This document shows positions 30,391 to 47,246 of a DNA stretch of 64,000 nucleotides, one piece after another. The notes under the pieces are model-generated. The model ran no database searches and was not told where the DNA came from. It was given only the letters and a program-made list of their open reading frames with translations. The first letter of the stretch is position 1, and the number at the start of each line of letters is the position of its first letter. A program made the position numbers and the translations under genes. Origin of the DNA: Macrostomum lignano. Lineage: Eukaryota. Location of the stretch: NCBI GenBank assembly GCA_002269645.1, contig NIVC01000432.1, forward strand, positions 1-64,000, in the 5' to 3' direction.

Positions 30391-31868
30391 TCAGGCGCGA
30401 ACGCTGCGCAGTCGAGCGAGCCGGAGCTCCCTCTCCAGCATCTCTACGTCGTCATAATACCGACCGTAGTAGTACGGATAAAAGTACGAATGATAGGGAC
30501 TGTAGTAGTATGGATAGTAGTAGGGCCTGTAGGGCCGGTATGGCGAGCCGCTTCGCCGCAGGGTGTCGGCGACTCGCTCGTGAAGGTCGGCGGACGTCAG
30601 GGCCGGGTAGCGCTCGCTCAGCGTCGGCCGGGACGGCGACGGCGACGGCGACCTTGGACGGGCCCGCGACGGCGCCTGCGCCTCCGCCAGAGACGACGTC
30701 GAACGGCGCAAATCGGCGGCGGATCGACTGCGCTTCAGACGTCCGGTGCCACCGCCCTCGCCGACGCCGCCGCTTCTCGACTTCGCCTCGCCGTAATTAT
30801 CGTGCATATTCGGCGTCCTGCCGACTAGCGAGTTTTCCACGCGCCGAACAACAAACGGTGGTCGACCGTTCGACGCCCCGCAGGCCGCCGCGGCAGCCGA
30901 TTTTGTCGGCGGTTTCTTCGATCGAGTTGACGGTTCGTCCAGATCGTCGCAGAGGGCCTTCAGCCGGGGGCTCGGCGATCGGGAGCGCATAGCGGCGGCC
31001 AGCGTCTGCCGCTCGTAGTTGTTGGCGCCGCCGCCGCTACCGCCACCGCCACCAGACTGCCTCAGTCGCCGGGACCGGGATCGAGACCGGGACCGGCGGG
31101 CGCCGTTGACGCCGACTGAGCTGCCGTTGGCTTTCGAGGTTGCCAGGAGGCCGCCGCCCGGCAGCAGCTCCTCGATGGCGGCGTAGGTGGCGAATTCGAG
31201 CCTGGGCGGCACGCCGGGAAAGTCCAGGGTTCGCGTCATAAGGATGTCGCGGCTGGCCGAGTGGCTGGTCCGGCCGGCCAGAGGGCCGAAGAAGTCGCGG
31301 CAGTTGGTCTCGTGGTAGGCCAGCAGGCAGCCGCCCAGGTAAATGTCCGTCACCTGGGCGGGAAATAAGATCAGTCAAAAGTTGATTCGTTAGTACGAGT
31401 AGTTTTCAGTAGTATTAGTAGTAGTATTATTCATCCAGTGATCGTTTCTAAATTTTTTTTTTCAAAAATGCATCTCAAACTTCTGGACGTCGTCCTTCCA
31501 CTTGAGTAGTTCATGGTGTGCTTGCAGTCAAATTTACGTCGAATAAAACTGAGTACAAAAAATTAAAGTACATGCAGTTTAAAACAGTAACCAAACGTTA
31601 CCTGTCGCAGCTCCAGCGTCACCGGAGCGTCAGCCAGCAGGTCGGCCACTACGAAGGCGTCCTCGGCTGTCCAGAACAGGCGCTCGAACTGGAATCGCTC
31701 GTGAACGTTCAGTGGGAAGGCGGCTTCCAGCAGGCGGGTCCGCTTGGCCTGCCCAAAGACGACAACTACCAGAAAGAGGTCGTCCCGGATGGGGAGCCGC
31801 GTGCCCGGCGAGGACACCACGTCCAGCGTCAGCTCCAGCGTGCATTTGAATCCGCCGCCGCTAGACAT
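30391..31868 (-). CDS. SPATA6: Spermatogenesis-associated protein 6 family; exons 31868-31602 and 31353-30391 (about 409 aa)
   Basis: N-terminal SPATA6 domain FKCTLELTLDVVSSPGTRLP..DDLFLVVVVFGQAKRT...FPL...FQFERLF...LELRQ / LLAYHETNCRDFF...PRLEFAT; phase-0 GT-AG intron CAG|GTAACG ... CCCAG|GTG. Confidence 0.88.
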
Positions 31869-33194
31869 GCTGATGAGTTTCTAATTTTTATTATCGATTC
31901 CGGCTTGTCTTACTGCCAAAAATGAGAGACTAGAAGACGACAGCGGCTCATGAATGCGAATTTTAGTGTTTTATGATTTTCAGATCCTGATACTTTAGCA
32001 ACAAATTTAATTATTATAAGTTGTCATAGTTATTTTTAGTTCCTGTTCATATTGTAATAAAATCGTCAATTATTGAAATTATTGAAAATCAAAAGTCTAA
32101 ATAACTTTAATTAAATCACAAACTTTTAAACTCATAAAATAATCATTCTTAACTTTCGTACTTTGTTGTTTAATTTAGTTTTAAATACTTAAATCCAAAA
32201 AGGCTCCCTTTGCTTACTGGAATTTTTTTATAAATACCATTAATACATGTATAGTAAAAGCTAAACTGTGTCATTGTTTCTGTATAGTTCATTTAATTAA
32301 ATTTAAAACTGTGTCACAGATAAATAGATAAGGAGTGAAGGCAGTGAGTGGTTCTGTCAGTCAAATCAATTACAATTATAGCTGGCTAGAAATGTGCAGA
32401 TGATCTAGTTACTATTTAATTTTTATAAAATTTCTTTAGGGGTAATGTAAATAAAATATAGCCAAAGTTTTATTAGCAAAAATCATTAAGGCAGATGTAA
32501 CCTGCATCGCATGACCACTGATCATACGAGGGTAAAGCCTTGTTAGAAATATATAGATTTACTATAGTCTAAATCACATTGAATCAATTTGCCAAGCAAA
32601 ATAATAAAGTTACAGTTACGTTTTTTCAGAAAAGAAACCCAAAGTATTCTCAAAAAGAAATCTGAAGTTTACACAAACGAAATTGGTTAATACAGGGTAG
32701 TAAGGCAACAGGAAAAAGAAAGTTACATATGAACTGAAAATCACAAGTCATCCGGTTGCTACGCAATATGCATAAAATTAAACGGCATTGTGATTAATAA
32801 ATATAGGAGTTCATGCTACACATTTAAACTTTTGCTGCAACAGTTGAAAGCCACTAAATGATGCTATTGTAAATCTTACTGAAGTATTTGTTTAAGTTGA
32901 TAACAATTAATACTGCTTTAAGGCGGTGAATAAAAAATATATATACATATAAGCATATAAAATTTCGATTTGTGATTTTTTACGGTGCAAAAAACAAATA
33001 TCGTCTATGAAAGCAGACTAAAGCGTTGCCTCTTTTATCCAACGCCTTAATTTTTTGCAATGTAGTGTCACTAATTTTATGTTTAACGCTGCTAGTTCAC
33101 TGATTTGTTTTGCAAAAAATAATATCATCAAATATTATCACTATTAAAGTTCAAAGTTTACGGGTGATTGTTAGCCCGTAGTTTGCGCCAGAGG

Positions 33195-33722
33195 GAGTTT
33201 GCATCAGATTTTTTATCGTTAGTCTCTTTTTACGTTTTCACTTTTCTAATGTATGCAATATAAAGTATTTAAATTGCAATCATGCAACAATATTTTTGCA
33301 ATTTTGGTACGTTTCACCACATTTTAATTATGATGGCAAAATCTATCGTAAAATACTCAACTGATATCAAGAGAATGAAGACGATAATAACGAACCAACA
33401 GCGAAATAAAATGAACGATCGTATATGCTTTGCGCATTTCTGAGAGCTGCCCCAGTCAACCTCTTAATTACGCTCGTAAATTATAACCTTGTAAATCTTT
33501 TATCATTGTCAATGCCAATGACTTTGATAAGGGAGTGACCTCAATAAAGTAAAATATCACGAAAGCAATATATATCTTGGTTCAATCAGACAAATTTAAT
33601 TTACAGTAAAATAATTCTAAAGCACTAAATACTCGTTCAATGAGAAAGCACATAATTTTATTATAAAAATTTCCTTAATTTTCACACGTTCGTTTGAACG
33701 GTTACACAAACCAAAGCCACTC
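33195..33722. repeat. Diverged direct duplicate (X') of the Tctex 3' flank at 35082-35717 (X)
   Basis: Collinear shared words GAGTTTGCATC, CTGATATCAAGAGAAT(G/A)AAGACGATAA, TCTTTTATCAT, AATTTACAGT, AAAGCACTAAA, GGTTACACAA..CCAAAG.CACTC in both copies. Confidence 0.75.
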
Positions 33723-34292
33723 AAAGTCTCAAGAATACATAAGCTGAAAATTGAAACAAAAAACAAAAATAATAAAGGCACAATTAACCACAGTGCATAA
33801 AGAGATCGTGTTAAGGATTAAACTCAATATATAATTAGTTCGATCGGTTGCCATGCTAACAACGTACACTGAAGTACCTTTAATTTTTTATGATGGTCTT
33901 TGAGGGTTGCGTACACGGAGTGTGTAGGTTGGCACACATAAGACTCGTTCACACTACGCCAGTTCTGAATGTCACACTGATAGTGCGTGGTTTTTTTGTT
34001 AAATATAAGATGGAGCATGCACTTTTCTTATTTAGTCGAGTGATTAAACTTGATGGCTCAATTCGATCGTGGTGTAAACAAGCCTTTGATCTAAACACTA
34101 TGAGAATACTGCTGCACACACAGTACTAATTTCTTTGCTTTAAAAAACGCAGCTACAAAAATTTTCGATAACCCTGCTAGAATAATAGTCATTTGCTTAA
34201 GGTACCAGGTTCATACCACACCATAATTGTTAGTATAAATTTGGTAGCAAGAGAAAACAAGAAACTTGAAACCTAATTACCTGCTTAAGGTT

Positions 34293-35085
34293 TCAAAAAT
34301 GAACCTTCATTCGCTTGGTGCGAATAGCGAACGCAACGTTAGCCAGCATGCTGGACACATCAACGTTGGCACTTTCCCACAGCGTGCCGCTTGTGACGAT
34401 AACCCAGAATAGAGCAGAAAACAGAGAGTGGCCCATGTTGCCCAGTGCGGCCTCCTCCGAGAATGGCACAGGGTTGCCCGTCTTCGACTCGTAGATCTCC
34501 TTGAATGTCCTGTAGAACTCCTTGGGGATCTTGTCCACGTGTTCCTGCATCGCCTCGGTCGATAAGCTGGAAATCATCAACAAGCCGAGGTCGGGGCCGA
34601 AAACACTGACGTCCCAGAACTGCCAGTCAAATAGTCGACAAATCATGCTGCCTTCATCGCCCTTGAACATGAAGTTTGAGAACCAGAGGTCGCCATGCGA
34701 TATTCCGACGGGCTCATCTGTGAACGCTGGAACCCCTTTCATTGGATCTGCGACTAAAGTTGCGATAAGCTTCTTCACAAGCTCTTGGATCAGCTCACGA
34801 TCCGAATGTGACGGTACATGCTTGTGCAAGTTCTCAAAGAAGTACTTCGTGTTTTTTTCCAAAATTTCTTTGAGGTCAACGCCACTCTTCCGAATTCCAT
34901 CACTAAATGGCGACTCGCGGCCGAACAGCACGGAGTCCAGCGAGTAGTTAAAGTTCACCCGAGCGATCCAGAACGCGGCCTGCAGTCGGGCAAGGGTCCT
35001 CACTACGCAGTAGGCCTGCTCGATGCCGAATGACTTCCGATCGACAAGGCTGAAGCCTTGCTTCGTCATGTCCTCCATAACGAGT
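34293..35085 (-). pseudogene. EcKL / choline-kinase-like paralog A, 5'-truncated (ORF begins at internal MEDM, 261 aa)
   Basis: HGDLWFSN and LFDWQF motifs; about 98% nt identity to paralog E (44047-42908), but homology stops abruptly at 35085, removing about 118 N-terminal codons. Confidence 0.8.
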
Positions 35086-35711
35086 TTGCATCCGAGTTTG
35101 TATCATCAGTTTCCTTAAGACTCATTTCCAATTGCATCATCACCTTTCCACGCTCGTACTTTTATGTACGTGTACTGGCCCAATACAATTTATTTTAAAC
35201 AATCATTCAACAATACATTTGGTGCTTCTTACAACTCTTTAATCGATGATTGCGGAACCTAATGTAAAATAATCATCTGATATCAAGAGAATAAAGACGA
35301 TAAGAATGAACCAACAACGGAATAACATGCAATGAACTCGTATATTTTTCCATGTACATACATTTCATGTAAATTGGTGTATTTTTACTGAGAGTTTCTG
35401 CCCTTTAGTCAGCCTTGTAATTAACTAAGTAACTGAATATCTTTTATCATCGTCATTGTACTTCAAGGTCTTTGATGAGGTTGAACTAAATAAAGTAATA
35501 ATATAAATCGCGAAAACAATACTAGTATAATCTTAGTCCAAACAGACAAGTTTAATTTACAGTTACAATAATATACGAGTAAAATCATAAAGCACTAAAC
35601 ACGATCTACAATGACAACGCCAATAGTTTAATGCTATAATTTCCGTAATTTTTAAACTTAAAATTTTTACATTTAATTTTTATGTTCTAAAGGGTTACAC
35701 AATTACCAAAG

Positions 35712-36281
35712 TCACTCGCAGTAGATCCAGAATGCAGCCGCAAAAGCTTTAAAGGTTGGTCTATCTAGGAAGCCAGTTACAAAGTCATCAGTAGCTGTGT
35801 TGATCACAGACCGGGATGCTAGTAGCAGAACCTGCTCGGACTTTTGCGCGATCGTCACGTGAACAATAATCTTGTAGCGAGGACAGTTGAAGTTGTTCTT
35901 CATCCTACGCTTCACGTCCTCGGAGACCATTTTTGTCAGCTTGGGAGCCGCCTTTGGGTCGTACTTGGACTCTCCAAGAAAGAATGTCAGACTGTTGTTG
36001 ACGATCTGTTGCACCTCGGCTGGCGGAAACTTCTTGGCAACATCTGGCTCCAGATGGTAGGTGTTCTCCATCTTCTTCACTGGTCGGTTGCGTCGGTGCC
36101 TCGCTCGGATGTCGCCGATTCGCTTCTTGAGCATCATGAGGGTCGCCAGACTCGGCTGTTTCGGCCGAGTCGCTGCTGCTCCCTCCTGACCGTCAGGTGA
36201 TCCCTTGACGACGTTAGAAGGCTTTAGCTGGCTTGGAGCCGGAGCCGACACTGTGGAGATGCGCTTCTTGTCGTTGCTCAT
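35712..36281 (-). CDS. TCTEX1D1: Tctex1 domain-containing dynein light chain (TCTEX1D1/DYNLT5-like), intronless, 189 aa
   Basis: MENTYHLEP...KFPPAEVQQIV...Y...L.K.VSEDVKRRMK...RYKIIVHVTI.Q...ASR...TDDF...FAAAFWIYCE: typical Tctex-1 domain with a basic N-terminal extension. Exact paralog assignment uncertain. Confidence 0.85.
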   Translation of the reverse strand: MSNDKKRISTVSAPAPSQLKPSNVVKGSPDGQEGAAATRPKQPSLATLMMLKKRIGDIRARHRRNRPVKKMENTYHLEPDVAKKFPPAEVQQIVNNSLTFFLGESKYDPKAAPKLTKMVSEDVKRRMKNNFNCPRYKIIVHVTIAQKSEQVLLLASRSVINTATDDFVTGFLDRPTFKAFAAAFWIYCE

Positions 36282-36884
36282 GCCTGAATTTTCTCTGAGG
36301 CACTCTCTCGGAGATTGCTATTGAATGGTTTTCTATGAAGCTAACGGTGAATATTTCAGTTTTTCTGGTCTTATCAGATTCACCTCTAATCGCTCACACA
36401 GGTACCGCACCATTTTGCTTATTGTGTGCTCGAAAAATACCCTAGCAACCAACAACTCTTATCTCCATGTATAGTGGACTGAAGGGTGAAATTGATTGCA
36501 TTTCCAAAAAGAAAGCTGAAAGCAATAAAAGAACTTATTATCGCTACACACGGCTGACAGCCCTCACAATTCTAAACTTTTAGAAATTTTAGCCTTCATG
36601 TAGATAGACTCAAAAATGTTGACCAAACGTTTTCCATGGGCAAACTTGGTACTAAGGACGGGAAACTACAGTAAAAGAGGCATGACTTTTAGAGCGCGGA
36701 AAGAATGGTCAAATATCAGAATTTAGAATGATTTAAACGTATATTTTTTCGTAAATTTTTGCAATTGCTTCATCAAATTCTTCGTCGGGTTTTAAGCTAC
36801 GCATTTTTCAAATGTCTGATGGAACTTTTAGTAAATGAAATGATTCGTTAGTAGGGTTGATATCACTGCTCTCCGGCAACACCG

Positions 36885-38022
36885 TCAGTCGGCAGGCATA
36901 GCCAAACGGTTTGAACGAAGAACAAAGGCCAAATTGTTCAGCAAACTGGGCACGTCCAGGTAGTCAGTCTCCCACAGCACACTGCTGGACGTCACTACCA
37001 GAAAAAAGCCCAAAAGAATGCATTCTTCATATTAACAAGTGCGGCCTCCTCAGAGAACGGTGCCGGGCTGCCCGTCTTCGACTCGTAGATCTCCTTGAAT
37101 GTCCTGTAGAACTCCTTGGGGATCTTGTCCACGTGTCCCTGCATCGCTTCAGTCGACAAGCTGGAAATCATCAGCAAGCCGAGGTCGAAGCCGAAAAGCC
37201 CAACATCCCAGAACTGCCAGTCAAACAAGCGGCAGATCATTCTGTCTCCGTCGCCCTTAAACATGAAGTTCGAGAACCAGAGGTCGCCATGAATGAGACC
37301 CATTGCTCGATCCTTGCCACTGGGCATAGCGCTGCTGTGTTCCGTACCGTCTTCTCGACGAATTCGTCTAGGCGAGACAAAATTATTTTCTGATCGTCAA
37401 CTGACTTGACTCGCTTGCCCAGATTAGCGCGAAAGTATTCAGCGTTGCGCTCGATCATCGGACGAAAATCAATGCGACTCTGTCGGATCGAGTTGGTAAA
37501 TGAAGTTTCTGGGCCGAACAGCACAGAGTCCAGCGAGTAGTTGAAGTTTACCCGAGCGATCCAGAACGCGGCCTGCATTCGGGCAAGGGTCCTTACTACG
37601 CAGTAGACCTGCTCGATGCCGAATGACTTCCGATCGACAAGGCTGAAGCCTTGCTTCGTCATGTCCTCCATAACGAGAATCGTGCCCTTGTCGCTGATCT
37701 TCTGACCGAAGGCTCTCGGGAACACCCCGCTCAATGTTGTACTGCTCCATGACCCGCTCCAGCACTGGGCCCGTCAAACCATAGAACACGACCTCGGTAC
37801 GACAGAAGTGCGTGCTCACCTGCTGGAGCTGTTCTAATTCGGTCCGAGTTGCATCGCTCCATTTAATAAAGATGTGCAGCGGCTGATCGGAACCCTCTCT
37901 CGTGATCGTAACCGCCCTTCGAAAGCTGAGGTAGCCGCCTTGGCCCACAACCTCGCTTGCCTTGGAGAGTTTGTTGGAGGATTGAAAGTTGAATAGTCGA
38001 GCAGCTCTGCTTCAATGTTCAT
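36885..38022 (-). CDS. EcKL / choline-kinase-like paralog B, full length but with four single-base frameshifts (gene or young pseudogene)
   Basis: MNIEAELL...GQGGYLSFRR...HFCRTEVVFYGLTGPVLERVMEQYNIE...HGDLWFSN...LFDWQF...LWETDYLDVPSLLNNLAFVLRSNRLAMPAD*; shifts near 37998, 37728, 37328 and 36998; no in-frame nonsense codons once corrected. Confidence 0.8.
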
Positions 38023-38793
38023 TGTTTACGATCGCCCAGCTTAATTAAGAGATTGTAAAGGCTGCACGACTGTACGTTGTTTACTACAGAGCTAAAGCAA
38101 ATTTGCAACACTATTTTCTCGTAGTTAAGTTTGCCTGTATTGCGCTATCTTGGAGCTGAGGTGGTATGCTACTCGTATGATGAGTTTAGCGAACACAAAG
38201 CATGCAGTTCTGCAGTTATGCAAGCAAAGGATTTCTGCTTGGCCTTATCTGACTGGCAATTTTACTCGGGTGTAGAGGTTTCAGCAAATTGCTATGTTAA
38301 GTAAGTTAACTTTACTGCACACATTAATGGATGTTCGGGCTCCCAAACTTTCAAATTTCAAATTTAATTGAATACCCGATAAGAGCATATGAGAGCTTGC
38401 AGTAGTACTAAACCCCACATTGCGACAAATAGAAGCTAATTAGAATTGCACTCTTTAATCATCCAGTGGTTGCATGATATGCCAATCAGAACAGAGTGGA
38501 TCCAAGTCTTATCTGTACCAATATTCCAACCCGAAGCTATTCGCTTACTTTCGAAAAACGAGCAAAGAAGTTAACTCTAAAGAAGATCAGACTTGAGGTC
38601 TCTGACGCGTAAGTGGACGAATGGACTTTTTTAGAGTTAATTGCTCGCGTGATGCTCTTATCAATGGTAAATGTTAAATTATAAAGTGTGCAGACTCAAG
38701 CCCAGGGTTATTTACGAAAACTCAGAAATTAGAGAGAAGTTAATAGAGTTATTACATACATTCTAGCTAGACTCAAACGCTACTATAGATACT

Positions 38794-39926
38794 ATGGACG
38801 TTGTTGAGGAGCTAAAGCTTCTGCTTAAACTGAAGTCTGATAGTGAGATCGAACAGAGCGATGAGATGTTCCGTAAAGGTGGCTACCTCAGCTTCCGCCG
38901 CGCAGTGACTATCAAGAGGGACCGTGAGCCGCCGATGCACATATTCGTTAAATCTAGCGACGTTACGCGCCCGGAGTTGGATCAGCAGCAGTTTATTAGC
39001 TTCCATGCCTGTCAAAAGGAAGTCATATTCTACGGACTGATGGGTCCCGTGCTCGAGCGGGTCATGGAGCAGTACAACATTAAGCGGGTGTTTCCCAAAA
39101 CGCTTGGACAGAAAATCAAAGACAAGGGCACCATTCTGGTGATGGAGGACATGACGAAGCAGGGGTTCAGTCCTGTAGACAGGATGTCATTTGGTATCGA
39201 GCAGGCCTACTGCGTAGTGAGGTCCCTTGCCCGAATGCAGGCCGCGTTCTGGATCGCTCGGGTGAACTTAACTACTCGCTGGACTCCGTGCTGTTCGGTA
39301 AAGAGTCACCGTTCAGTGACAGTGTACGGAAAAGCGGCATGGATTTCAAGCCAATGATTGAGCGAAATTCTGCGTACTTCTTTGACAATTATGAAAAGCA
39401 TGTAAAATACCCGGAGGACGCACAAGTGATTCGCGAGTACGTGACCAAGTTCATCAAGACACTTTTGGACGATCCAATGAAAGGCATGCCCTGTCTCACT
39501 GACGAGCCACTTGGACTTTCGCACGGCGACCTCTGGTTCTCGAATTTCATGTTCAAGGGCGACGGAGACAACATGATTTGTCGACTGTTTGACTTGCAAT
39601 TTTGGGACATCAGCATCTTCGGCTTCGACCTAGGATTGATGATGGTGACCAGTTTGTCGAATGAGTCAATGCAGGAACACGTGGACAAGATTCCGAAGGA
39701 GTTCTACAGGACATTCAAGGAGATCTACGAGTCGAAGACGGGCAGCCCTGTGCCCTTCTCAGAGGAAGCTGCACTGGGCAACATGGGCCAGTCGATGTTC
39801 TACGCCATGTTCTGGGTGATCGGCACCTGCGACCTGCTGTGGGAGAGCGACAATATTGACGTGACCAACATGCTTTCCAATGTTGCTTTCGCTATTCGCA
39901 CCAATCGCATCAGGTTGCCATTTTAG
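38794..39926 (+). CDS. EcKL / choline-kinase-like paralog C, one -1 frameshift near 39269
   Basis: ORFs 38794-39357 and 39288-39926 join at AACTT[c]AAC (NFN) when compared with the paralogs; HGDLWFSN and LFDLQF motifs. Confidence 0.85.
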
Positions 39927-40930
39927 TTAACGAAGAAACATTTCATTGTGACCACAATCTGATTTAAGAATTTAGTGTACACTAGTTTAAAATAAAACGT
40001 CTCATATATACACTGTAGCTGAAAGTTTACTTGCAGATTTGTGCGTTTGACACCATGTGCTTAGATGAGAATAGTTAACTAATTTCACTCCTATTGACAG
40101 TAGTGTATGAGAAAACATTTTTCTATTTTCCCTTCAATTTCTGGCTGGCTTTTTAATCTCTGTGCCAATTAAAGTACACAAGAGCGATTTTCACCCACTG
40201 AAATACAAAGATCAAAGTACACGAAAGATTATAAGAAAGAAATAATGCTAAACATACAAAACAAAATTAGTTTCCTCAAAGTGTTTGCAAGAAAAAGTAC
40301 ATTGAATTTACAATATTTGCTCCGAAATTACTACTGGGCACATCCTATTCAATTACTGCAATAAGTACAATCGTTCTGTAAGTAACGAAATTTCAATTTG
40401 TCCTAAAGGCCTGGATGGATGCAAGAAAACTGATTAATTGCGCCAGGCAGGAAACTGACTGACGATCTAATTAGGCTAGAACTGACCCCGGTTAGGCACA
40501 ACTAATGCATGCAGAACTCGTGCACCCTGACACTATTGCTACAATAGTCCGAAAGCAATTATCAGCACACAGCCAGTTAGTTAGATATAGGAAGCTACAG
40601 GCACAGCACATGTTCTACATGTAGCTTCCTTCTTGTGGGCCTGGGGCCACGATTCCGCAGTGTCTCTTGCTACTTTTCTACACAAAGCCATGAACATTTC
40701 CGACGCATTGCACAGTTGCTTTTTCATTATCAGCGCTTCCGAGTCAGTAAATCGAACCTCTCTCTGGTAGGTCTTCGCTCTCAGAACTAAAAACTGTATA
40801 TACTGATTGATATTATTTTCTTTGTGAATTCTTGAACTCTATAAGCCGCGAAGAAACTGAATAGTTCTATTTGTTTGAGCTAACATAGATTTTCTGTAAT
40901 AACTTAAGCCATTGACACGAAGCATCAGAT

Positions 40931-42064
40931 ATGGATATAACAAAAGAGCTCATTAGACTTTTCGGCCCAAATTCTGACAAAGACATCACTCTAGAAAAAG
41001 AAATTTTTGGCCAGGGCGGTTACCTTAGTTTTCGCCGGCAAGCCACCGTCAACAAGGAAGAACGAACGCTGCACATATTCGTAAAATCGAGTGATCTAAC
41101 TCGCTCTGAGCTGGATCAGGCAGTGCGGCAGTTATGCAACCACTTTTGCCGAATAGAGTGCATATTTTATGGCCTGGTTGGACCCGTGCTGGAGCGGGTG
41201 ATGGAGCAGTACAACATTGAGCGGGTGTTCCCGAGAGCCTTCGGTCAGAAGATTAGCGACAAGGGCACGATTCTCGTTATGGAGGACATGACGAAGCAAG
41301 GCTTCAGCCTTGTCGATCGGAAATCATTCGGCATCGAGCAGGCTTACTGCGTAGTGAGGACCCTTGCCCGAATGCAGGCCGCGTTCTGGATCGCTCGGGT
41401 GAACTTCAACTACTCGCTGGACTCCGTGCTGTTCGGCCGCGAGTCGCCATTCGCTGATTGCATTAAAAGAAGTGGCGTTGATTTCAGGCCATTTGTCGAG
41501 CAAAGCTCAAAGTACTTTCTTAAACACATAGGAAAGCACGCTTCTCTAGAAGATGCTTCGCTGATTCGAGATACCGTGTTAAAATTCATCGATAATTTGA
41601 TGGAGGATCCGATGAAGGGGATGCCTTGCCTCAATGACGAGCCACTTGGACTTTCGCATGGCGATCTCTGGTTTTCTAACATTCTGTTTAAAGGCGATCA
41701 GAAAGACGGCACAACTTGCTGCTTACTGGACTGGCAGTTCTGGGACCTCAACGTCTTTGGCTTCGACCTTGGCCAGTTGATGTTTACAAGTTTATCCTTC
41801 GAAGCGATGCAGGAACACGCGGACAAGATCCCAAAGGAGTTCTATAGAATGTTCAAGGAGATCTACGAGTCGAAGACGGGCAGCCCTGTGCCGTTTCCAG
41901 AGGAAGCGGCACTTGGTAACATGAGGAAGTCGTTGTTCTACGCTATGTATTGGGTTGTTCGCTCTAGCATCCTGATTTGGGAAAGCGGCAACATTGATGT
42001 GACCAACATGCTGGCTAATATGGCCTTCGCAATTCGTACGGATCGAATCTGGTTTCCATTTTGA
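40931..42064 (+). CDS. EcKL / choline-kinase-like paralog D, intact intronless 377 aa
   Basis: GGYLS N-lobe motif, FVKS, LVMEDM hinge, Brenner-type HGDLWFSN and LLDWQF; APH/choline-kinase fold of the EcKinase/DUF227 type. Confidence 0.9.
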   Translation: MDITKELIRLFGPNSDKDITLEKEIFGQGGYLSFRRQATVNKEERTLHIFVKSSDLTRSELDQAVRQLCNHFCRIECIFYGLVGPVLERVMEQYNIERVFPRAFGQKISDKGTILVMEDMTKQGFSLVDRKSFGIEQAYCVVRTLARMQAAFWIARVNFNYSLDSVLFGRESPFADCIKRSGVDFRPFVEQSSKYFLKHIGKHASLEDASLIRDTVLKFIDNLMEDPMKGMPCLNDEPLGLSHGDLWFSNILFKGDQKDGTTCCLLDWQFWDLNVFGFDLGQLMFTSLSFEAMQEHADKIPKEFYRMFKEIYESKTGSPVPFPEEAALGNMRKSLFYAMYWVVRSSILIWESGNIDVTNMLANMAFAIRTDRIWFPF

Positions 42065-42134
42065 GCAACGCTGTTCACCCAGTCGAGAACAATAACGCTT
42101 AATCCTTTATGCTGACGAATAAATTAGTTCTATT

Positions 42135-42245
42135 TTCCCTTTATACGTCGTAGACTTTCCTGACCCTTTATATGTTCGTAGACTTTCCTGACCCTTTATA
42201 CGTTCGTAGACTTTCCTGACCCTTTATACGTTCGTATACTTTTCC
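42135..42245. repeat. 28-bp tandem repeat x4 (CCCTTTATACGTTCGTAGACTTTCCTGA) between convergent EcKL D and E
   Basis: Directly visible. Confidence 0.9.
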
Positions 42246-42907
42246 GACTGAGGAAATCAAAGACAGCTAGCCTCATATTGATTATAATTTACTTGCTCTG
42301 GGTTTCTATGCAAACTGACTTTAAAAAGTTCGTTGTTTTTTGCTACGAGTACTTCCAATAGGATGACTTGTTCCTGCTGAAGTTCGAATATACCGTTCCA
42401 TTAGCACTACACTTAACCCCCTAGTGAGTCAAATAAAAAGACAAGCTGAAAATAAAAATAAAAAACAAAAAGAAAGGCGCAACGACAGCGCTTATATATA
42501 GTCGAATTATAACTAAAGCGAAGAAAAGCTTCACCGAGTCGAGTTTAGACTACAACTAGCCCACGTTCAGCTCGAATTGGTAAAGTAATATATCGGTACA
42601 CTTACGAATCGTTCACCACGCCGTTTTTGCACTATCGCACTGACAGTAATAAAGCGTGTGCATTTACATAAGGTGTTTAGAGGCTTGTTTACACCGCCAT
42701 CAAATGAAATTACTCGACTAAATAGGAAGTGCTTTGACTTCACGAAAAAACCCTGCACTAATTTCGTTGCCTTGAAAAGGGAAAATTAAGTCAGCTACAA
42801 TACGAATTCTGATAATTTCGCTAGTAAAAAATTCATTTGTTTAAGTACCAGGTGAAAGCCAAAACATAATTGTTAGTAAAAAAATGGTAACACAAGAGAG
42901 GCAAGCC

Positions 42908-44047
42908 TTAGAATTCAAAAGGAAACATAATGCGCTTGGTGCGAATAGCGAACGCAACGTTAGCCAGCATGCTGGACACATCGACGTTGGCACTTTCCCA
43001 CAGCGTGCCGCTTGTGACGATAACCCAGAATAGAGCAGAAAACAGAGAGTGGCCCATGTTGCCCAGTGCGGCCTCCTCCGAGAATGGCACAGGGTTGCCC
43101 GTCTTCGACTCGTAGATCTCCTTGAATGTCCTGTAGAACTCCTTGGGAATCTTGTCCACGTGTTCCTGCATCGCCTCGGTCGACAAGCTAGAAATCATCA
43201 ACAAGCCGAGGTCGAGGCCGAAAACACTGACGTCCCAGAACTGCCAGTCAAATAGTCGACAAATCATACTGCCTCCATCACCCTTGAACATGAAGTTCGA
43301 GAACCAGAGGTCGCCATGCGATATTCCGACGGGCTCATCTGTGAACGCTGGAACCCCTTTCATTGGATCTGCGACTAAAGTTGCGATAAGCTTCTTCACA
43401 AGCTCTTGGATCAGCTCACGATCCGAATGTGACGGTACATGCTTGTGCAAGTTCTCAAAGAAGTACTTCGTGTTTTGTTCCAAAATTTCTTTGAGGTCAA
43501 CGCCACTCTTCCGAATTCCATCACTAAATGGCGACTCGCGGCCGAACAGCACGGAGTCCAGCGAGTAGTTGAAGTTCACCCGAGCGATCCAGAACGCGGC
43601 CTGCAGTCGGGCAAGGGTCCTCACTACGCAGTAAGCCTGCTCGATGCCGAATGACTTCCGATCGACAAGACTGAAGCCTTGCTTCGTCATGTCCTCCATA
43701 ACGAGAATCGTGCCCTTGTCGCTGATCTTCTGACCGAAGGCTCTCGGGAACACCCGCTCAATGTTGTACTGCTCCATGACCCGCTCCAGCACTGGGCCCG
43801 TCAAACCATAGAACACGACCTCGGTACGACAGAAGTGGTTGCTGACCAACTGCAGCGCATTTAGGTCAGACCGAGACACATCGCTAGATTTGATGAAGAT
43901 ATAGATAGGTACTTCGTTGTCTCTTGTAATTTTAACAGGCTTGCGGAAGCTGAGGTAACCACCCTGTCCAAACACCTCTTCTCCCTGAGTGATTTGCTTC
44001 TCAGAGTTCAGATCAAACAAGTGAACAAGTTCTGCTGCTATGTCCAT
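42908..44047 (-). CDS. EcKL / choline-kinase-like paralog E, intact intronless 379 aa
   Basis: Same motifs (GGYLS, FIKS, LVMEDM, HGDLWFSN, LFDWQF); complete ORF. Confidence 0.9.
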   Translation of the reverse strand: MDIAAELVHLFDLNSEKQITQGEEVFGQGGYLSFRKPVKITRDNEVPIYIFIKSSDVSRSDLNALQLVSNHFCRTEVVFYGLTGPVLERVMEQYNIERVFPRAFGQKISDKGTILVMEDMTKQGFSLVDRKSFGIEQAYCVVRTLARLQAAFWIARVNFNYSLDSVLFGRESPFSDGIRKSGVDLKEILEQNTKYFFENLHKHVPSHSDRELIQELVKKLIATLVADPMKGVPAFTDEPVGISHGDLWFSNFMFKGDGGSMICRLFDWQFWDVSVFGLDLGLLMISSLSTEAMQEHVDKIPKEFYRTFKEIYESKTGNPVPFSEEAALGNMGHSLFSALFWVIVTSGTLWESANVDVSSMLANVAFAIRTKRIMFPFEF

Positions 44048-45009
44048 GGCTGAACGGGGCTTTTGTGAGTTGAATGAGAAATATTTTTTAATTCGGCTTT
44101 CATTCGATAATGTAAGTCATTTAAATCATTCACACAATGGAAAGTTGTTTTAAGGTTAGATAAGGAGTTGTCTGTTGACGACAAACATTTCAGCGCTTAA
44201 TGCGGCCAGAGCGAACAACTCAACTCGACTTACTTAATTGGAGTTCTGATTGGTCTGCTCTCGGCACGAAAAATAGACCAGACTTTAGCTGAGGTCAAAG
44301 ATAGCTATGATAAAATCCAAATTTCAAGTGTTTTGCAACAATGCAACTAAGTGCACGTGATTGTGCTCGTGACAGAGGTAAAAATTGTAGCCTTGTAAAT
44401 ACTTTAAAGAGCAACGGGTTTTTTAATTTATGCGTTCCTTAAGAAAAACCCTGCTAAAAGTACAAGTACTTCATATTAGTCTGGTAGTCAGGACTTTTTA
44501 CGATCCGTTAACCGGACTAATACAGACAATATAACTTTGAAAACCGAGATTTACTATAGTGCCAAAGAACAAAAGCAATTCATTTATATTTTACAAGCTT
44601 TGTTTAAGAAGGTAAAAATATTGCTTAAGGCACTTGGACACGTATCCTAAATTATTCTCTATTCTTTACAAAGGAGCATTATTCATAAGTTCTTATCCAA
44701 CTCCTTGCTAAGCGCAAACGGAGAACTCAAAAAGGCGAATGCTAGTAGTCTAATGCTAGTAGTCTCTTATCAGTTTAGTAGCTAAAATACGACTAGAATT
44801 TCCATAGCAGCGACACACATACGAACTTAAAAAATCAGAACAGCTCACTAGACTGTTTGAATTCCAGTAAGTCACCCAGAAAAAGAGGGCAGTCAGTCAG
44901 GGTGGCCATAGCAATGAACGGTGCGTACAGTAAGTACGTAGTGAGCAGTCAGTTGTGACAAGTTGCAAGCGAAATGATGCTGTTAAGAACATCAGATTGA
45001 GCTAATAAC

Positions 45010-45830
45010 CTCCCAGTTGCATCACCGACTTTCCAGGACGTCAGATTGCGCTAACACGAGTAATCTCTCAAATGTGTCACCGGACTCCCAGTACCTCACA
45101 TTGCGCCAATAATCTCCCAAACGTCTCACAGCACTCCCAGAGCCTCACATTGCGCCAATAATCTCCCAAACGTCTCACAGCACTCCCAGAACCTCACATT
45201 GCGCCAATAATCTCCTAAACGTCTCACAGCACTCCCAGAACCTCACATTGCGCCAATAATCTCCCAAACGTCTCACAGCACTCCCAGAACCTCACATTGC
45301 GCGAATAATCTCCCAAGTGTCACCGCACTCCCAGAACCTCAGACTACACTAATAATCCCCCAAGTGTGTGACCGCACTCCCAGAACCTCAGACTACACTA
45401 ATAATCCCCCAAGTGTGTGACCGCACTCCCAGAACCTCAGACTACACTAATAATCCCCCAAGTGTGTGACCGCACTCCCAGAACCTCAGACTACACTAAT
45501 AATCTCCCAAATGTGTCACCGCACTCTCAAAACCTAAGTTACACCAACAATCTCCCAAATGTGTCACCGCACTCCCAGAGCCTCAGACTACACTAATAAT
45601 CTCCTAAGTGTGTCACCGCACTCCCAGAACCCCAGACTACACTAATAATCTCCCAAATGTGTCACCGCACTCCCAGAGCCTCAGACTACACTAATAATCT
45701 CCCAAGTGTGTCACCGCACTCCCAGAACCTCAGACTACACTAATAATCCCCCAAGTGTGTGACCGCACTCCCAGAACCTCAGACTACACTAATAATCTCC
45801 CAAATGTGTCACCGCACTCTTAGAACCTCA
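45010..45830. repeat. 49-bp minisatellite (GCACTCCCAGAACCTCAGACTACACTAATAATCTCCCAAATGTGTCACC) with two unit subtypes
   Basis: 49-bp spacing (45181/45230; 45361/45410); about 16 units; CACATTGCGCC subtype left, CAGACTACACT subtype right. Confidence 0.93.
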
Positions 45831-47246
45831 TAGCCCTAGTCAGCTAACAAAAAATAAACTATTAAACTAAAATACTTGGCTATAAAAATGAATCAGAATT
45901 AAATTCGAGTGATAGAGCGCTTAATTAATTTCTCTCTAGTGAACGAATCAATGTTGTTATATTTTAAGTACAGCAACCATAAATAACTGTATTTAACCCA
46001 TAATCTGCCCACAAACTGCTTTTAATAATTGGAATTCAAGAATTGGACACTTTCTGCAAGAAAAAAACAGATTATACATTTCATAATCAATAATAAAGTC
46101 CAATTTTGCATCAGAGAGAATCTTATTGAAAAGGACATTGTCTACTAGATAGATATCACGCAACAAAACAGACAGTTTATTGTAGAATTCCAAACATTAA
46201 AAATTAATTAATATTTTGGCTTGACAAAACAAGAATGTAGAAAAGCGCCATCCAACCACCTGCACATCCGGAATGAACTGTAGATTTTACTATCATACAA
46301 ACAAAAATCTGAATAAACATTGCATTATTTTCCAAAATCGATCAAGATCACAATTTACACCGTAGTACCGTACAAAGCTGAAATTAATTCCACAAATTAA
46401 GGGAGGGCTAAACTGACACCCAGTTTTTCACCAGCTGAAAAACATTTTCATTTAAAGCATCAAAATTATATAATCATTGGGATTATTGGCATTACAAGAC
46501 TGTCTATCAATCGTCAAATTTGAATAAACTGCAAACATGTAGTCTGCAGACTTGAGCAACTTCTTTGGGTCAGATTGTAAAGGCCTGGGTAGGGATGTTG
46601 CTATGTTATTTGATTTTGAACTCTTTCTTTCACTGAAGAAAGATGCGACGTCAATTCCGGCTTTCAATGTGGCATCCTGAATGCACCCTGGCAACCAGCT
46701 TGTAACATTTCGGGGAGGCTTGATAAATAAAGTTAACTAAATATCATGCATTAATTAGTATTGTCAGTTTGAAGCGATGGTACACACACGGTGAGTGGGC
46801 ACCAACAATTCTTTACAATATTAGAACACATCGCAACCATACTACTAGTCAGTAGGAAACATAGAATATTAATTTCTTAAATGACAAACTGAACTCTGGA
46901 TTCAAGACAACGCTACAAAAAAATACAGCGATATGGAAACTGTGGAGATATAACGAAGGATTATAATTAATAAACACAATAGCCAAGTATAAAAATATTG
47001 TGTACTGCAGTTTTTTGCGCAGAAATTAAAATTAAAAGTGTGACACAATCGCTTATATTTTCTTTTTTTGTTTAAAACAACGAGACAAACGGGAAAAAGA
47101 GCAAAGACTGGAAGCGCATGCAACTGGGACAGATTTCATTTTTCTCGATAACAGAGCTCCTTAATATACAGTGACTGCATAGTCTGCTTATTGTGTAATC
47201 AAAAGCTATAGTAGCCTTGGCGTGAGACAACGGACAGACAGCTAGA

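What the first reader, a model, noticed from the sequence alone, without database searches (positions are those of the whole stretch)
34293..44047. Five-copy EcKL kinase array built as a mosaic of homogenised and hypervariable blocks in inverted orientations
Orientation is A-, B-, C+, D+, E-. Block 1 (GPVLERVMEQYN...DSVLFG, about 265 nt, covering the hinge) differs at only about 6 nt between D and E, synonymous sites included. B equals E almost base for base from HFCRTEVV onward. Block 2 (MQEHVDK...AALGNM) is also highly similar in all copies. The N-terminus and the segment between hinge and HGD loop are only about 45-55% identical in protein (seen, hand counts). EcKLs phosphorylate ecdysteroids and are implicated in xenobiotic detoxification in insects (established); the inter-lobe insert contributes to substrate binding in this fold. 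Inference: patchwork gene conversion keeps the scaffold uniform while substrate-binding parts diverge, and crossover between inverted identical blocks (B/C, D/E) would invert the DNA and swap N- and C-terminal modules, a shufflon-like generator of small-molecule kinase diversity.
Basis: partly seen in the sequence, partly recalled or inferred. Interest (0 to 1): 0.7.

Follow-up and report, generated by a model that had tools for sequence, protein, structure and literature searches.

The report
Gene-conversion mosaic in flatworm kinase cluster
A cluster of duplicated small-molecule kinase genes in the flatworm Macrostomum lignano has two short stretches kept almost identical by DNA copying between the duplicates (gene conversion) while the rest is anciently diverged; this is a clear example of a well-known process, not a programmed DNA-shuffling device.

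Summary
Window 34.3-44.0 kb comes from Macrostomum lignano, a flatworm, not an insect. It carries four full-length EcKL/CHK-type kinase genes (B-, C+, D+, E-) and a 5'-truncated fragment (A-). A Tctex-1 gene lies between A and B.

Nucleotide identity is 31-68% in the N-terminal, helical-insert and C-terminal segments. It rises to about 82-100% in Block 1 (~258 nt, hinge) and 86-100% in Block 2 (~119 nt).

Evidence for interlocus gene conversion:
- dS in Block 1 is 0.10-0.14 (D/E, B/E) against saturation outside.
- Codons of conserved residues are identical in all four genes in 69/103 cases inside the blocks versus 11/77 outside (p=7.5e-13).
- Run-length permutation tests are significant, and GC3 is raised in the blocks.
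- Fragment A is 98-99% identical to E, while their 3' flanks are ~70%.
- A second, collinear copy of the locus shows the same mosaic, intact B and C, and SNPs shared among paralogs.

The 'shufflon-like' inversion generator is not supported. Both locus copies have the same orientations, and there is no recombinase. B/C share only 53 identical nt. The variable segments look old and constrained, not hypervariable.

The parts
34293..35093 (-). Copy A: 5'-truncated EcKL fragment (E residues ~112-377). It lacks the N-lobe, including the beta3 Lys and alphaC Glu. It retains a 261-aa ORF starting at MEDMTKQ.
   Evidence: tblastn 96.6% to E; alignments; 98-99% nt identity to E from the truncation point to ~20 nt before the stop.
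35712..36281 (-). Interposed unrelated gene: Tctex-1 family dynein light chain ORF (189 aa), between A and B.
   Evidence: Pfam PF03645, 66.8 bits; also present in the second contig.
36885..38022 (-). Copy B: full-length EcKL-type gene. In the window it carries four 1-nt indels (near 38003, 37728, 37333, 36999). It is intact (379 aa) in the second contig.
38794..39926 (+). Copy C: full-length gene with one 1-nt deletion near 39270, inside Block 1. It is intact (377 aa) in the second contig.
40931..42064 (+). Copy D: intact 377-aa EcKL-type kinase gene.
42908..44047 (-). Copy E: intact 379-aa EcKL-type kinase gene. 14 synonymous against 1 nonsynonymous difference between the two locus copies.
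43542..43837 (-). Block 1 in E (43542-43798) plus the 5' extension of the B/E tract, which starts at HFCRTEVV (43837).
37514..37810 (-). Block 1 in B (37514-37771) plus the B/E tract extension. B and E share a run of 43 concordant polymorphic sites.
41180..41436 (+). Block 1 in D: 7 differences from E over 257 nt.
39043..39298 (+). Block 1 in C: 82-92% identical to the other copies. It is less homogenised, or was homogenised longer ago.
34921..35087 (-). Block 1b in A. The truncation point of A lies inside Block 1.
43055..43173 (-). Block 2 in E. The equivalents are A 34434-34552, B 37028-37146, C 39667-39785 and D 41805-41923.
34312..35087 (-). Long A/E conversion tract (partner in E: 42933-43708). 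It is 98-99% identical, ends ~20 nt before the stop codon, and the 3' flank beyond it is ~70% identical.

Best explanation
This is an old cluster of lineage-specific EcKL/CHK-type small-molecule kinase paralogs in Macrostomum lignano, with mixed gene orientations. It holds four full-length genes and one truncated fragment.

Most of each gene records the ancient age of the duplications: synonymous sites are saturated. Non-reciprocal homologous recombination between paralogs (interlocus gene conversion), acting between both direct and inverted copies, has repeatedly overwritten particular stretches:
- A ~260-nt block covering the end of helix C, strands 4-5, the hinge and the following long helix. 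It is very recent among A, B, D and E, and older or weaker in C.
- A ~120-nt block of C-lobe helices, older, in all copies.
- Nearly the whole of fragment A, overwritten from E or exchanged with it.

Inferred, not shown: conversion persists where protein constraint keeps enough identity for heteroduplex formation, which then reinforces identity. It is shut out of the N-terminal, helical-insert and C-terminal segments, which have diverged too far and where a converted allele may also be selected against.

The outcome is a mosaic of constant scaffold and divergent periphery, produced as a by-product of ordinary recombination rather than by a dedicated mechanism.
For: 1. dS by segment (NG86):
- Block 1: D/E 0.10, B/E 0.14, A/E 0.07, C against the others 0.43-0.65.
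- Block 2: 0.05-0.76.
- N-terminal and middle segments: pS 0.71-0.90, saturated.

2. Among amino acids conserved in B, C, D and E, the codon is identical in all four in 68% (Block 1) and 65% (Block 2), against 14% elsewhere (p=7.5e-13).

3. Permutation of polymorphic sites (Sawyer-type):
- B/E run of 43 sites, global p<=0.0002.
- At third positions only, D/E p=0.0004-0.017 and B/D p=0.0014 in the second locus.

4. A second contig of the same assembly (NIVC01001481.1) is collinear at 96.8% over 15 kb and shows the same mosaic.

5. In Block 1b, paralog distances (3-9/167) overlap the distances between the two locus copies of one gene (2-4/167).
- 8 of 12 variable sites differ between the two locus copies of a gene.
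- 6 have the same minor base in different paralogs.
- 22 of 45 informative site pairs show all four gametes.

6. Fragment A cannot encode a kinase, yet it is 98-99% identical to E. The A and E 3' flanks are only ~70% identical over 144 nt. Protein-level selection cannot explain this.

7. GC3 is 0.78-0.82 in Block 1 and 0.70-0.88 in Block 2, against 0.48-0.64 in the N-terminal and middle segments. This fits GC-biased conversion.

8. The blocks are only ~35-45% identical in protein to the nearest other M. lignano paralogs, so family-wide constraint does not explain nucleotide identity.
Against: - The assembly was polished with Pilon using short reads. Reads mapping ambiguously among paralogs could create or erase single differences. 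The fine-scale shared SNPs and the exact difference counts are therefore less secure than the block pattern.
- For Block 2 the copies still sort by gene between the two locus copies. Conversion there is inferred only from synonymous identity and is older; strong codon-level constraint is not formally excluded.
- Only two locus copies from one inbred line were available. No outgroup species was available to give the direction and age of the tracts.
- Quartet-informative sites are too few to give resolved, conflicting tree topologies.
Confidence: 0.85

Rival explanations
1. There is no conversion. The blocks are conserved because the nucleotide sequence itself is under selection, for example extreme codon preference, an RNA structure, an embedded regulatory or small-RNA element, or an overlapping reading frame.
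For: - Block 2 keeps gene-by-gene sorting between the two locus copies.
- GC3 is high in the blocks, which could also reflect codon preference in the most constrained parts.
Against: - The truncated, non-coding-competent fragment A shares the identity.
- Block 1 identity differs by pair (B=E, D close, C clearly apart) instead of being uniform.
- The B/E tract has a sharp boundary at HFCRTEVV that the other copies do not share.
- Different paralogs share the same SNPs, with four-gamete violations.
- No Rfam family matches anywhere in the window.
Confidence: 0.05
2. Assembly artefact: collapse, chimeric consensus or short-read polishing made the paralogs look identical in the blocks.
For: - Canu PacBio assembly polished with Pilon using Illumina and RNA-seq reads.
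- Scattered 1-nt indels differ between the two contigs.
- 36% of the assembly length lies in scaffolds classified as chimeric between subgenomes.
Against: - The blocks are only 120-260 nt long and lie inside genes whose flanks differ by 40-55%. Multi-kb long reads anchor them uniquely.
- Polishing cannot turn ~40% divergence into ~1-3%.
- Two separately assembled contigs give the same block boundaries, pair by pair.
- Block 1 in C stays distinct.
Confidence: 0.05
3. One reading: the inverted identical blocks are used for recurrent crossover that inverts DNA and swaps N- and C-terminal modules. This would be a shufflon-like generator of kinase diversity, germline-polymorphic or somatic.
For: - The geometry allows it. 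D(+) and E(-) are convergent, 843 bp apart, and share a 257-nt block at ~97-98% identity. A crossover there would exchange their C-terminal two-thirds.
- Conversion between inverted copies (D/E, B/D) shows that they do pair.
Against: - The two subgenome copies of the locus are collinear, with the same five orientations and no chimeric N/C combinations.
- There is no recombinase gene, and no ORF of 80 aa or more other than the kinases, Tctex-1 and ORFs overlapping them on either strand, in 32-46 kb.
- No short specific crossover sites were seen; the homology is simply coding sequence.
- Perfect matches between inverted pairs are 53-158 nt.
- Each copy has its own 5' region and N-terminus. This is unlike a shufflon, where one constant gene head is joined to alternative tails.
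Confidence: 0.03

Closest known systems
Interlocus (ectopic) gene conversion producing mosaic concerted evolution in clustered paralogs. Examples from my own knowledge, not checked here: the inverted hsp70 pair of Drosophila, human RHD/RHCE, CYP2D6/CYP2D7, red/green opsins, and arm-to-arm conversion in Y-chromosome palindromes.
   Same: - Short tracts with sharp boundaries.
- Synonymous sites homogenised inside the tracts and saturated outside.
- It acts between direct and inverted copies.
- Pseudogene-like fragments take part.
- GC3 is raised in the tracts.
- Paralogs share polymorphisms.
   Different: - The host is a neopolyploid flatworm and the family is an undescribed EcKL-type kinase clade.
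- The same ~260-nt window is the hotspot for several pairs.
- Two subgenome copies allow some exchange to be dated to roughly the time of subgenome divergence.
EcKL (ecdysteroid kinase-like, PF02958) / CHK kinase-like small-molecule kinases of insects and crustaceans
   Same: - Pfam EcKL hit at 101-105 bits.
- HGDxWxxN and DxQ motifs, and the beta3 Lys and alphaC Glu.
- Predicted fold is like choline kinase, fructosamine-3-kinase and APH.
- Clustered, lineage-specific duplicates, as in insect detoxification-type EcKL clades.
   Different: - Only 15-27% identical to arthropod members.
- The host is a flatworm. Scanlan et al. 2024 (PMC10859841) find EcKLs, within arthropods, only in Tetraconata, and did not treat other phyla.
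- The substrate is unknown, and there is no reason to assume ecdysteroids.
Shufflons and other programmed DNA-inversion systems. Examples from my own knowledge: R64 Rci/sfx, and Hin/Gin-type invertases.
   Same: Only the abstract geometry: inverted repeats inside coding sequence, so that a crossover would exchange C-terminal gene segments.
   Different: - No site-specific recombinase.
- No short dedicated crossover sites.
- No constant gene head joined to alternative tails.
- No alternative orientation observed.
- A eukaryotic nuclear locus.

Membership tests
EcKL / CHK kinase-like small-molecule kinases (PF02958) | Significant match to the Pfam EcKL model, above the gathering score | tested here: met
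   D 104.6 bits and E 101.4 bits against a cut-off of 22. Weaker hits to DUF1679, APH and choline kinase.
EcKL / CHK kinase-like small-molecule kinases (PF02958) | Catalytic residues of the fold: beta3 Lys, alphaC Glu, HxDxxxxN catalytic loop, DxQ metal-binding motif | tested here: met
   K53, E76, H244/D246/N251 and D267/Q269 are invariant in a 63-sequence family alignment. They are present in B, C, D and E. Fragment A lacks K53 and E76.
EcKL / CHK kinase-like small-molecule kinases (PF02958) | Bilobal eukaryotic-like small-molecule kinase fold with a helical insert | tested here: met
   AlphaFold2 model of E: pLDDT 91.2, pTM 0.92. Best PDB matches are choline kinase alpha, fructosamine-3-kinase and APH(3') at E~1e-6, TM 0.46-0.5.
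EcKL sensu Scanlan et al. (the arthropod family, Tetraconata) | Host belongs to Hexapoda or Crustacea, and the protein falls in an established EcKL subfamily | tested here: not met
   The host is the flatworm Macrostomum lignano. Identity to arthropod members is 15-27%. All 15 non-Macrostomum hits whose source was looked up are insects or crustaceans. No subfamily placement was attempted.
EcKL sensu Scanlan et al. (the arthropod family, Tetraconata) | Ecdysteroid or xenobiotic phosphorylation activity | not testable with these tools
   This needs enzyme assays.
Interlocus gene conversion / concerted-evolution mosaic | Synonymous divergence drops sharply inside tracts compared with the flanking coding sequence | tested here: met
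   dS 0.10-0.14 against saturation. Codon identity 69/103 against 11/77, p=7.5e-13.
Interlocus gene conversion / concerted-evolution mosaic | Runs of concordant polymorphic sites longer than permutation allows (Sawyer/GENECONV logic) | tested here: met
   B/E global p<=0.0002. D/E and B/D are significant at third positions. C/E and B/C are not significant.
Interlocus gene conversion / concerted-evolution mosaic | Inside tracts, paralogs are as similar as orthologous or homeologous copies, and paralogs share polymorphisms | tested here: met
   Block 1b: paralogs 3-9/167 against locus copies 2-4/167. Six SNPs are shared among paralogs, and 22/45 site pairs show four gametes. Caveat: short-read polishing. 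Not met for Block 2.
Interlocus gene conversion / concerted-evolution mosaic | Identity does not depend on coding function and ends at tract borders | tested here: met
   Fragment A is 98-99% identical to E, against ~70% in the 3' flank.
Shufflon / programmed DNA inversion | A dedicated site-specific recombinase encoded at or near the locus | tested here: not met
   The ORFs of 80 aa or more in 32-46 kb are the kinases, Tctex-1 and ORFs overlapping them on either strand. Pfam on the larger ORFs elsewhere in the window found no recombinase.
Shufflon / programmed DNA inversion | Alternative orientations of the segments exist | tested here: not met
   The two locus copies are collinear, with the same orientations. 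This is only two haplotype-like copies of one inbred line, so the test is weak.
Shufflon / programmed DNA inversion | One constant 5' gene part joined to alternative invertible 3' parts through short specific repeats | tested here: not met
   Every copy has its own divergent 5' flank and N-terminus. The repeats are 120-260-nt coding blocks.

The most novel reading that the evidence does not exclude
The cluster is a natural module-exchange system. Conversion is confined to scaffold blocks by selection against homogenising the substrate-facing insert and C-terminal helices. Occasional crossovers in Block 1 between the inverted pairs (D/E, B/D, A/D) generate inversion polymorphisms. These re-pair N- and C-terminal modules into new chimeric small-molecule kinases that segregate in Macrostomum populations.
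Probability: 0.04. Interest if true: 0.7.

Novelty: new member of a known kind. Interest (0 to 1): 0.3.

Why it matters
The locus is a clean, quantifiable example of segment-restricted concerted evolution. Tracts can be compared between two subgenome copies of a recent polyploid, so it could help measure tract lengths and rates of ectopic conversion in a flatworm.

It also shows that Macrostomum lignano has a lineage-specific, clustered expansion of EcKL-type small-molecule kinases. In arthropods this family is linked to steroid and toxin phosphorylation and is reported there only from insects and crustaceans. That gives a starting point for asking what these enzymes do outside arthropods.

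It does not reveal a new mechanism.

Tried and rejected
- Word-indexed protein searches with E and D returned only the window's own protein. They gave no extra copies.
- Exact-protein look-ups for D, full-length E and the Tctex-1 ORF found nothing. A third subgenome copy, and other assemblies, could therefore not be brought in.
- Quartet-site counts per segment were too few and too star-like to give formally conflicting topologies. The incongruence shows in distances, and in the BE|CD signal of codons 71-83, not in resolved trees.
- 'A, B and C are pseudogenes', my first reading, was dropped for B and C. Both are intact in the second contig, and the assembly is PacBio-based. A really is truncated in both contigs.
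- An apparent 67% protein identity of the second-contig A to E turned out to be a frameshift artefact of three 1-nt deletions.
- A known RNA element in the blocks was rejected: no Rfam and no tRNA hits.
- Positive selection in the variable segments could not be assessed. dS is saturated between paralogs, and differences between the two locus copies are too few.


Full report
**What is there**

The window is the first 64 kb of contig NIVC01000432.1 of assembly GCA_002269645.1; window coordinates equal record coordinates.

tblastn with the two intact ORFs finds exactly five related stretches in the window:
- A, 34293-35093 (-)
- B, 36885-38022 (-)
- C, 38794-39926 (+)
- D, 40931-42064 (+)
- E, 42908-44047 (-)

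D and E match Pfam EcKL (PF02958) at 101-105 bits against a cut-off of 22. They give weaker hits to DUF1679, APH and choline kinase. An unrelated Tctex-1 family ORF (35712-36281, -) lies between A and B.

State of each copy:
- A begins inside Block 1 at E residue ~112 and has no N-lobe.
- In the window B has four single-base indels and C has one.
- D (377 aa) and E (379 aa) are intact.

**A second copy of the locus**

The same assembly holds a second contig, NIVC01001481.1. It is collinear with window 32920-47868 at 96.8% identity, about 2.2% mismatches, and has the same five orientations.
- There B, C and E are intact ORFs of 379, 377 and 379 aa.
- D carries an 11-nt deletion near its 3' end, giving 386 aa.
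- A has three 1-nt deletions in short homopolymers.

DV1 carries three subgenomes that differ by 1.9-2.4% in SNPs (PMC10733133). The assembly is Canu/PacBio polished with Pilon (PMC5730564). I therefore read the second contig as another subgenome copy. I read the scattered 1-nt indels as probable residual long-read errors rather than pseudogenisation; this is inference.

Between the two locus copies E shows 14 synonymous and 1 nonsynonymous difference, D shows 10 and 5, C shows 3 and 2, and B shows 3 and 5. At least E and D are under purifying selection.

**The mosaic is real**

Nucleotide identity in sliding windows over the five copies:

| Segment | Identity |
|---|---|
| N-terminal third, and hinge to HGD loop | 31-68% |
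| Block 1, D/E | 96-100% |
| Block 1, B/E | 93-100% |
| Block 2, all pairs | 86-100% |
| All of A, against E | 94-100% |

Differences per block in a ten-sequence alignment of both locus copies:

| Region (alignment columns) | Differences |
|---|---|
| N-terminal (1-213), between paralogs | 75-84 of ~205 |
| N-terminal, between locus copies of one gene | 2-3 |
| Columns 256-346, B/E | 0 of 90 |
| Columns 256-346, D against B or E | 2-4 of 90 |
| Columns 256-346, C against the rest | 15-17 of 90 |
| Block 1b (347-513), among A, B, D, E | 3-9 of 167 |
| Block 1b, between locus copies of one gene | 0-4 of 167 |
| Block 1b, C against the rest | 14-19 of 167 |
| Middle segment, between paralogs | 78-126 of ~220 |
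| Block 2 | 0-17 of 119 |

Protein identity by segment is 49-54% (N-terminus), 85-99% (Block 1), 29-55% (middle) and 89-95% (Block 2).

**It is DNA-level homogenisation, not protein constraint**

1. Nei-Gojobori estimates:
   - Block 1 dS: 0.10 (D/E), 0.14 (B/E), 0.07 (A/E), and 0.43-0.65 for C against the others.
   - Block 2 dS: 0.05-0.76.
   - N-terminal and middle segments: pS 0.71-0.90, saturated, with dN 0.34-0.70.
   - The variable parts are therefore old and constrained, not hypervariable.
2. Take only residues conserved in all four intact genes of the second contig. The codon is identical in all four in 49/72 (Block 1) and 20/31 (Block 2), against 11/77 elsewhere. Fisher p=7.5e-13 combined, 1.8e-11 for Block 1 and 5.6e-7 for Block 2.
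3. A Sawyer-type permutation of polymorphic sites:
   - B/E gives a run of 43 concordant sites (global p<=0.0002).
   - At third positions only, the runs are significant for D/E (global p 0.017 and 0.0004) and for B/D (0.0014 in the second contig).
4. Fragment A cannot make a kinase, yet it is 98-99% identical to E from its truncation point to about 20 nt before the stop. The A and E 3' flanks align at only ~70% over 144 nt and then lose similarity.
5. SNPs in Block 1b:
   - 8 of 12 variable sites differ between the two locus copies of a gene.
   - Six have the same minor base in different paralogs.
   - 22 of 45 informative site pairs show all four gametes.
6. GC3 is 0.78-0.82 (Block 1) and 0.70-0.88 (Block 2), against 0.48-0.64 in the N-terminal and middle segments. 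GC-biased conversion would give this.
7. The nearest other M. lignano paralogs (PAA45927, PAA94455; 33-34% identical overall) are no more than moderately similar in these blocks. Family-wide constraint does not predict nucleotide identity.

**Caveats**

Pilon polishing with ambiguously mapped short reads could add or remove single differences. The shared SNPs and the exact counts are therefore softer than the block pattern. Polishing cannot create that pattern out of ~40% divergence. The pattern also recurs, with the same pair-specific boundaries, in two separately assembled contigs.

For Block 2 the copies still sort by gene. Conversion there is older and rests on synonymous identity alone.

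**Structure**

An AlphaFold2 model of E (63-sequence alignment; pLDDT 91.2, pTM 0.92) matches choline kinase alpha, fructosamine-3-kinase and APH(3') enzymes (Foldseek E~1e-6, TM 0.46-0.5).

K53, E76, D246, N251, D267, Q269 and D279 are invariant in the family alignment, with H244 nearly so. These residues are present in B-E.

Where the segments fall on the model:
- Block 1 (residues 84-172) covers the end of helix C, strands 4-5, the hinge LVMEDM and the long helix 135-158.
- The variable middle segment (173-238) is the helical insert.
- Block 2 (292-328) is a pair of C-lobe helices.
- The C-terminal helices (329-379) are variable.

That the insert and C-terminal helices shape the substrate pocket follows from what is known of APH and choline kinases. 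It is an inference here.

**How it most likely works**

Old duplicates pair ectopically. Heteroduplex and repair copy short tracts between them, regardless of orientation. Tracts start and survive where identity is still high, that is in the constrained scaffold, and this in turn keeps identity high. Segments that have diverged beyond the homology needed are excluded, and conversions there may also be selected against.

Shown: the tracts, their significance and their recency relative to subgenome divergence. Inferred: the feedback between constraint and conversion, and any role of selection for diversity.

**The inversion or 'shufflon' idea**

A crossover in Block 1 between convergent D and E would indeed exchange their C-terminal two-thirds. 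But several points count against a dedicated system:
- The two locus copies are collinear, with no chimeric genes.
- There is no recombinase. No ORF of 80 aa or more lies in 32-46 kb other than the kinases, Tctex-1 and ORFs overlapping them on either strand.
- Each gene has its own 5' region.
- Perfect homology between inverted pairs is only 79-158 nt (D/E), 68-137 nt (B/D) and 53 nt (B/C).

Rare homologous inversion cannot be excluded from two copies of one inbred line. Nothing suggests a dedicated or frequent process.

**Comparison and novelty**

Mosaic concerted evolution through interlocus gene conversion is well known in clustered paralogs, inverted pairs included. The examples are from my own knowledge: Drosophila hsp70, RHD/RHCE, CYP2D6/2D7, opsins and Y palindromes. 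This is a new instance of it.

The gene family is EcKL-type by Pfam, motifs and fold. It is only 15-27% identical to arthropod EcKLs. It sits in a flatworm, whereas Scanlan et al. 2024 report EcKLs, within arthropods, only from insects and crustaceans (PMC10859841). All 15 non-Macrostomum hits I looked up are insects or crustaceans. I found no paper describing these flatworm genes.

Overall interest is modest.

Noticed in passing
window 2645-30263: The first ~30 kb of the contig is a patchwork of more than 20 different micro- and minisatellite arrays. Unit lengths are 4 to 49 nt, up to ~550 copies, with strong strand skews. This looks like a subtelomeric or heterochromatin-like contig end lying just beside the kinase cluster.
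   Followed up: partly
window 21776-22027: About 36 tandem copies of TAGGGTT, which is TTTAGGG, the plant-type 7-nt telomere repeat. It lies internally in the contig. This is odd for an animal expected to use TTAGGG (my own knowledge).
   Followed up: no
window 35180-35652 and 33256-33682: Fragment A is bracketed by a ~430-490-nt direct repeat of ~67% identity, also seen in the second contig. It may mark how the partial copy arose: a duplication unit or a transposon-mediated capture.
   Followed up: partly
window 34293-44047 versus proteins P0005-P0018: Apart from other M. lignano proteins, every best hit I looked up for these flatworm kinases is from insects or crustaceans, at 23-31% identity. 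No other spiralian was seen among the hits whose source I looked up. This could mean ancient patchy retention or horizontal transfer of an EcKL-type gene.
   Followed up: partly
L002 (NIVC01001481.1), D copy, equivalent to window 42037-42047: The second-contig copy of D has an 11-nt deletion near the 3' end. It changes the last residues and extends the ORF to 386 aa. Unlike the 1-nt indels, this looks like a real difference between subgenome copies.
   Followed up: no
window 42137-42242 and 45054-45830: There is a 28-nt tandem repeat (3.8 copies) in the D-E intergenic spacer. A 49-nt minisatellite (about 16 copies) lies ~1 kb upstream of E.
   Followed up: no
window 30391-31353 (-) and about 47.2-53.8 kb: The neighbouring genes are an ORF with a SPATA6-like domain (PF14909, E=1.4e-10) and an Arf-family GTPase gene annotated across about 47-54 kb.
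   Followed up: no
window 34522-34947 (+), 43143-43568 (+), 39389-39688 (-), 41410-41682 (-): Long antisense ORFs (90-141 aa) lie opposite the insert/HGD part of copies A, E, C and D. They are probably a codon-composition by-product.
   Followed up: no
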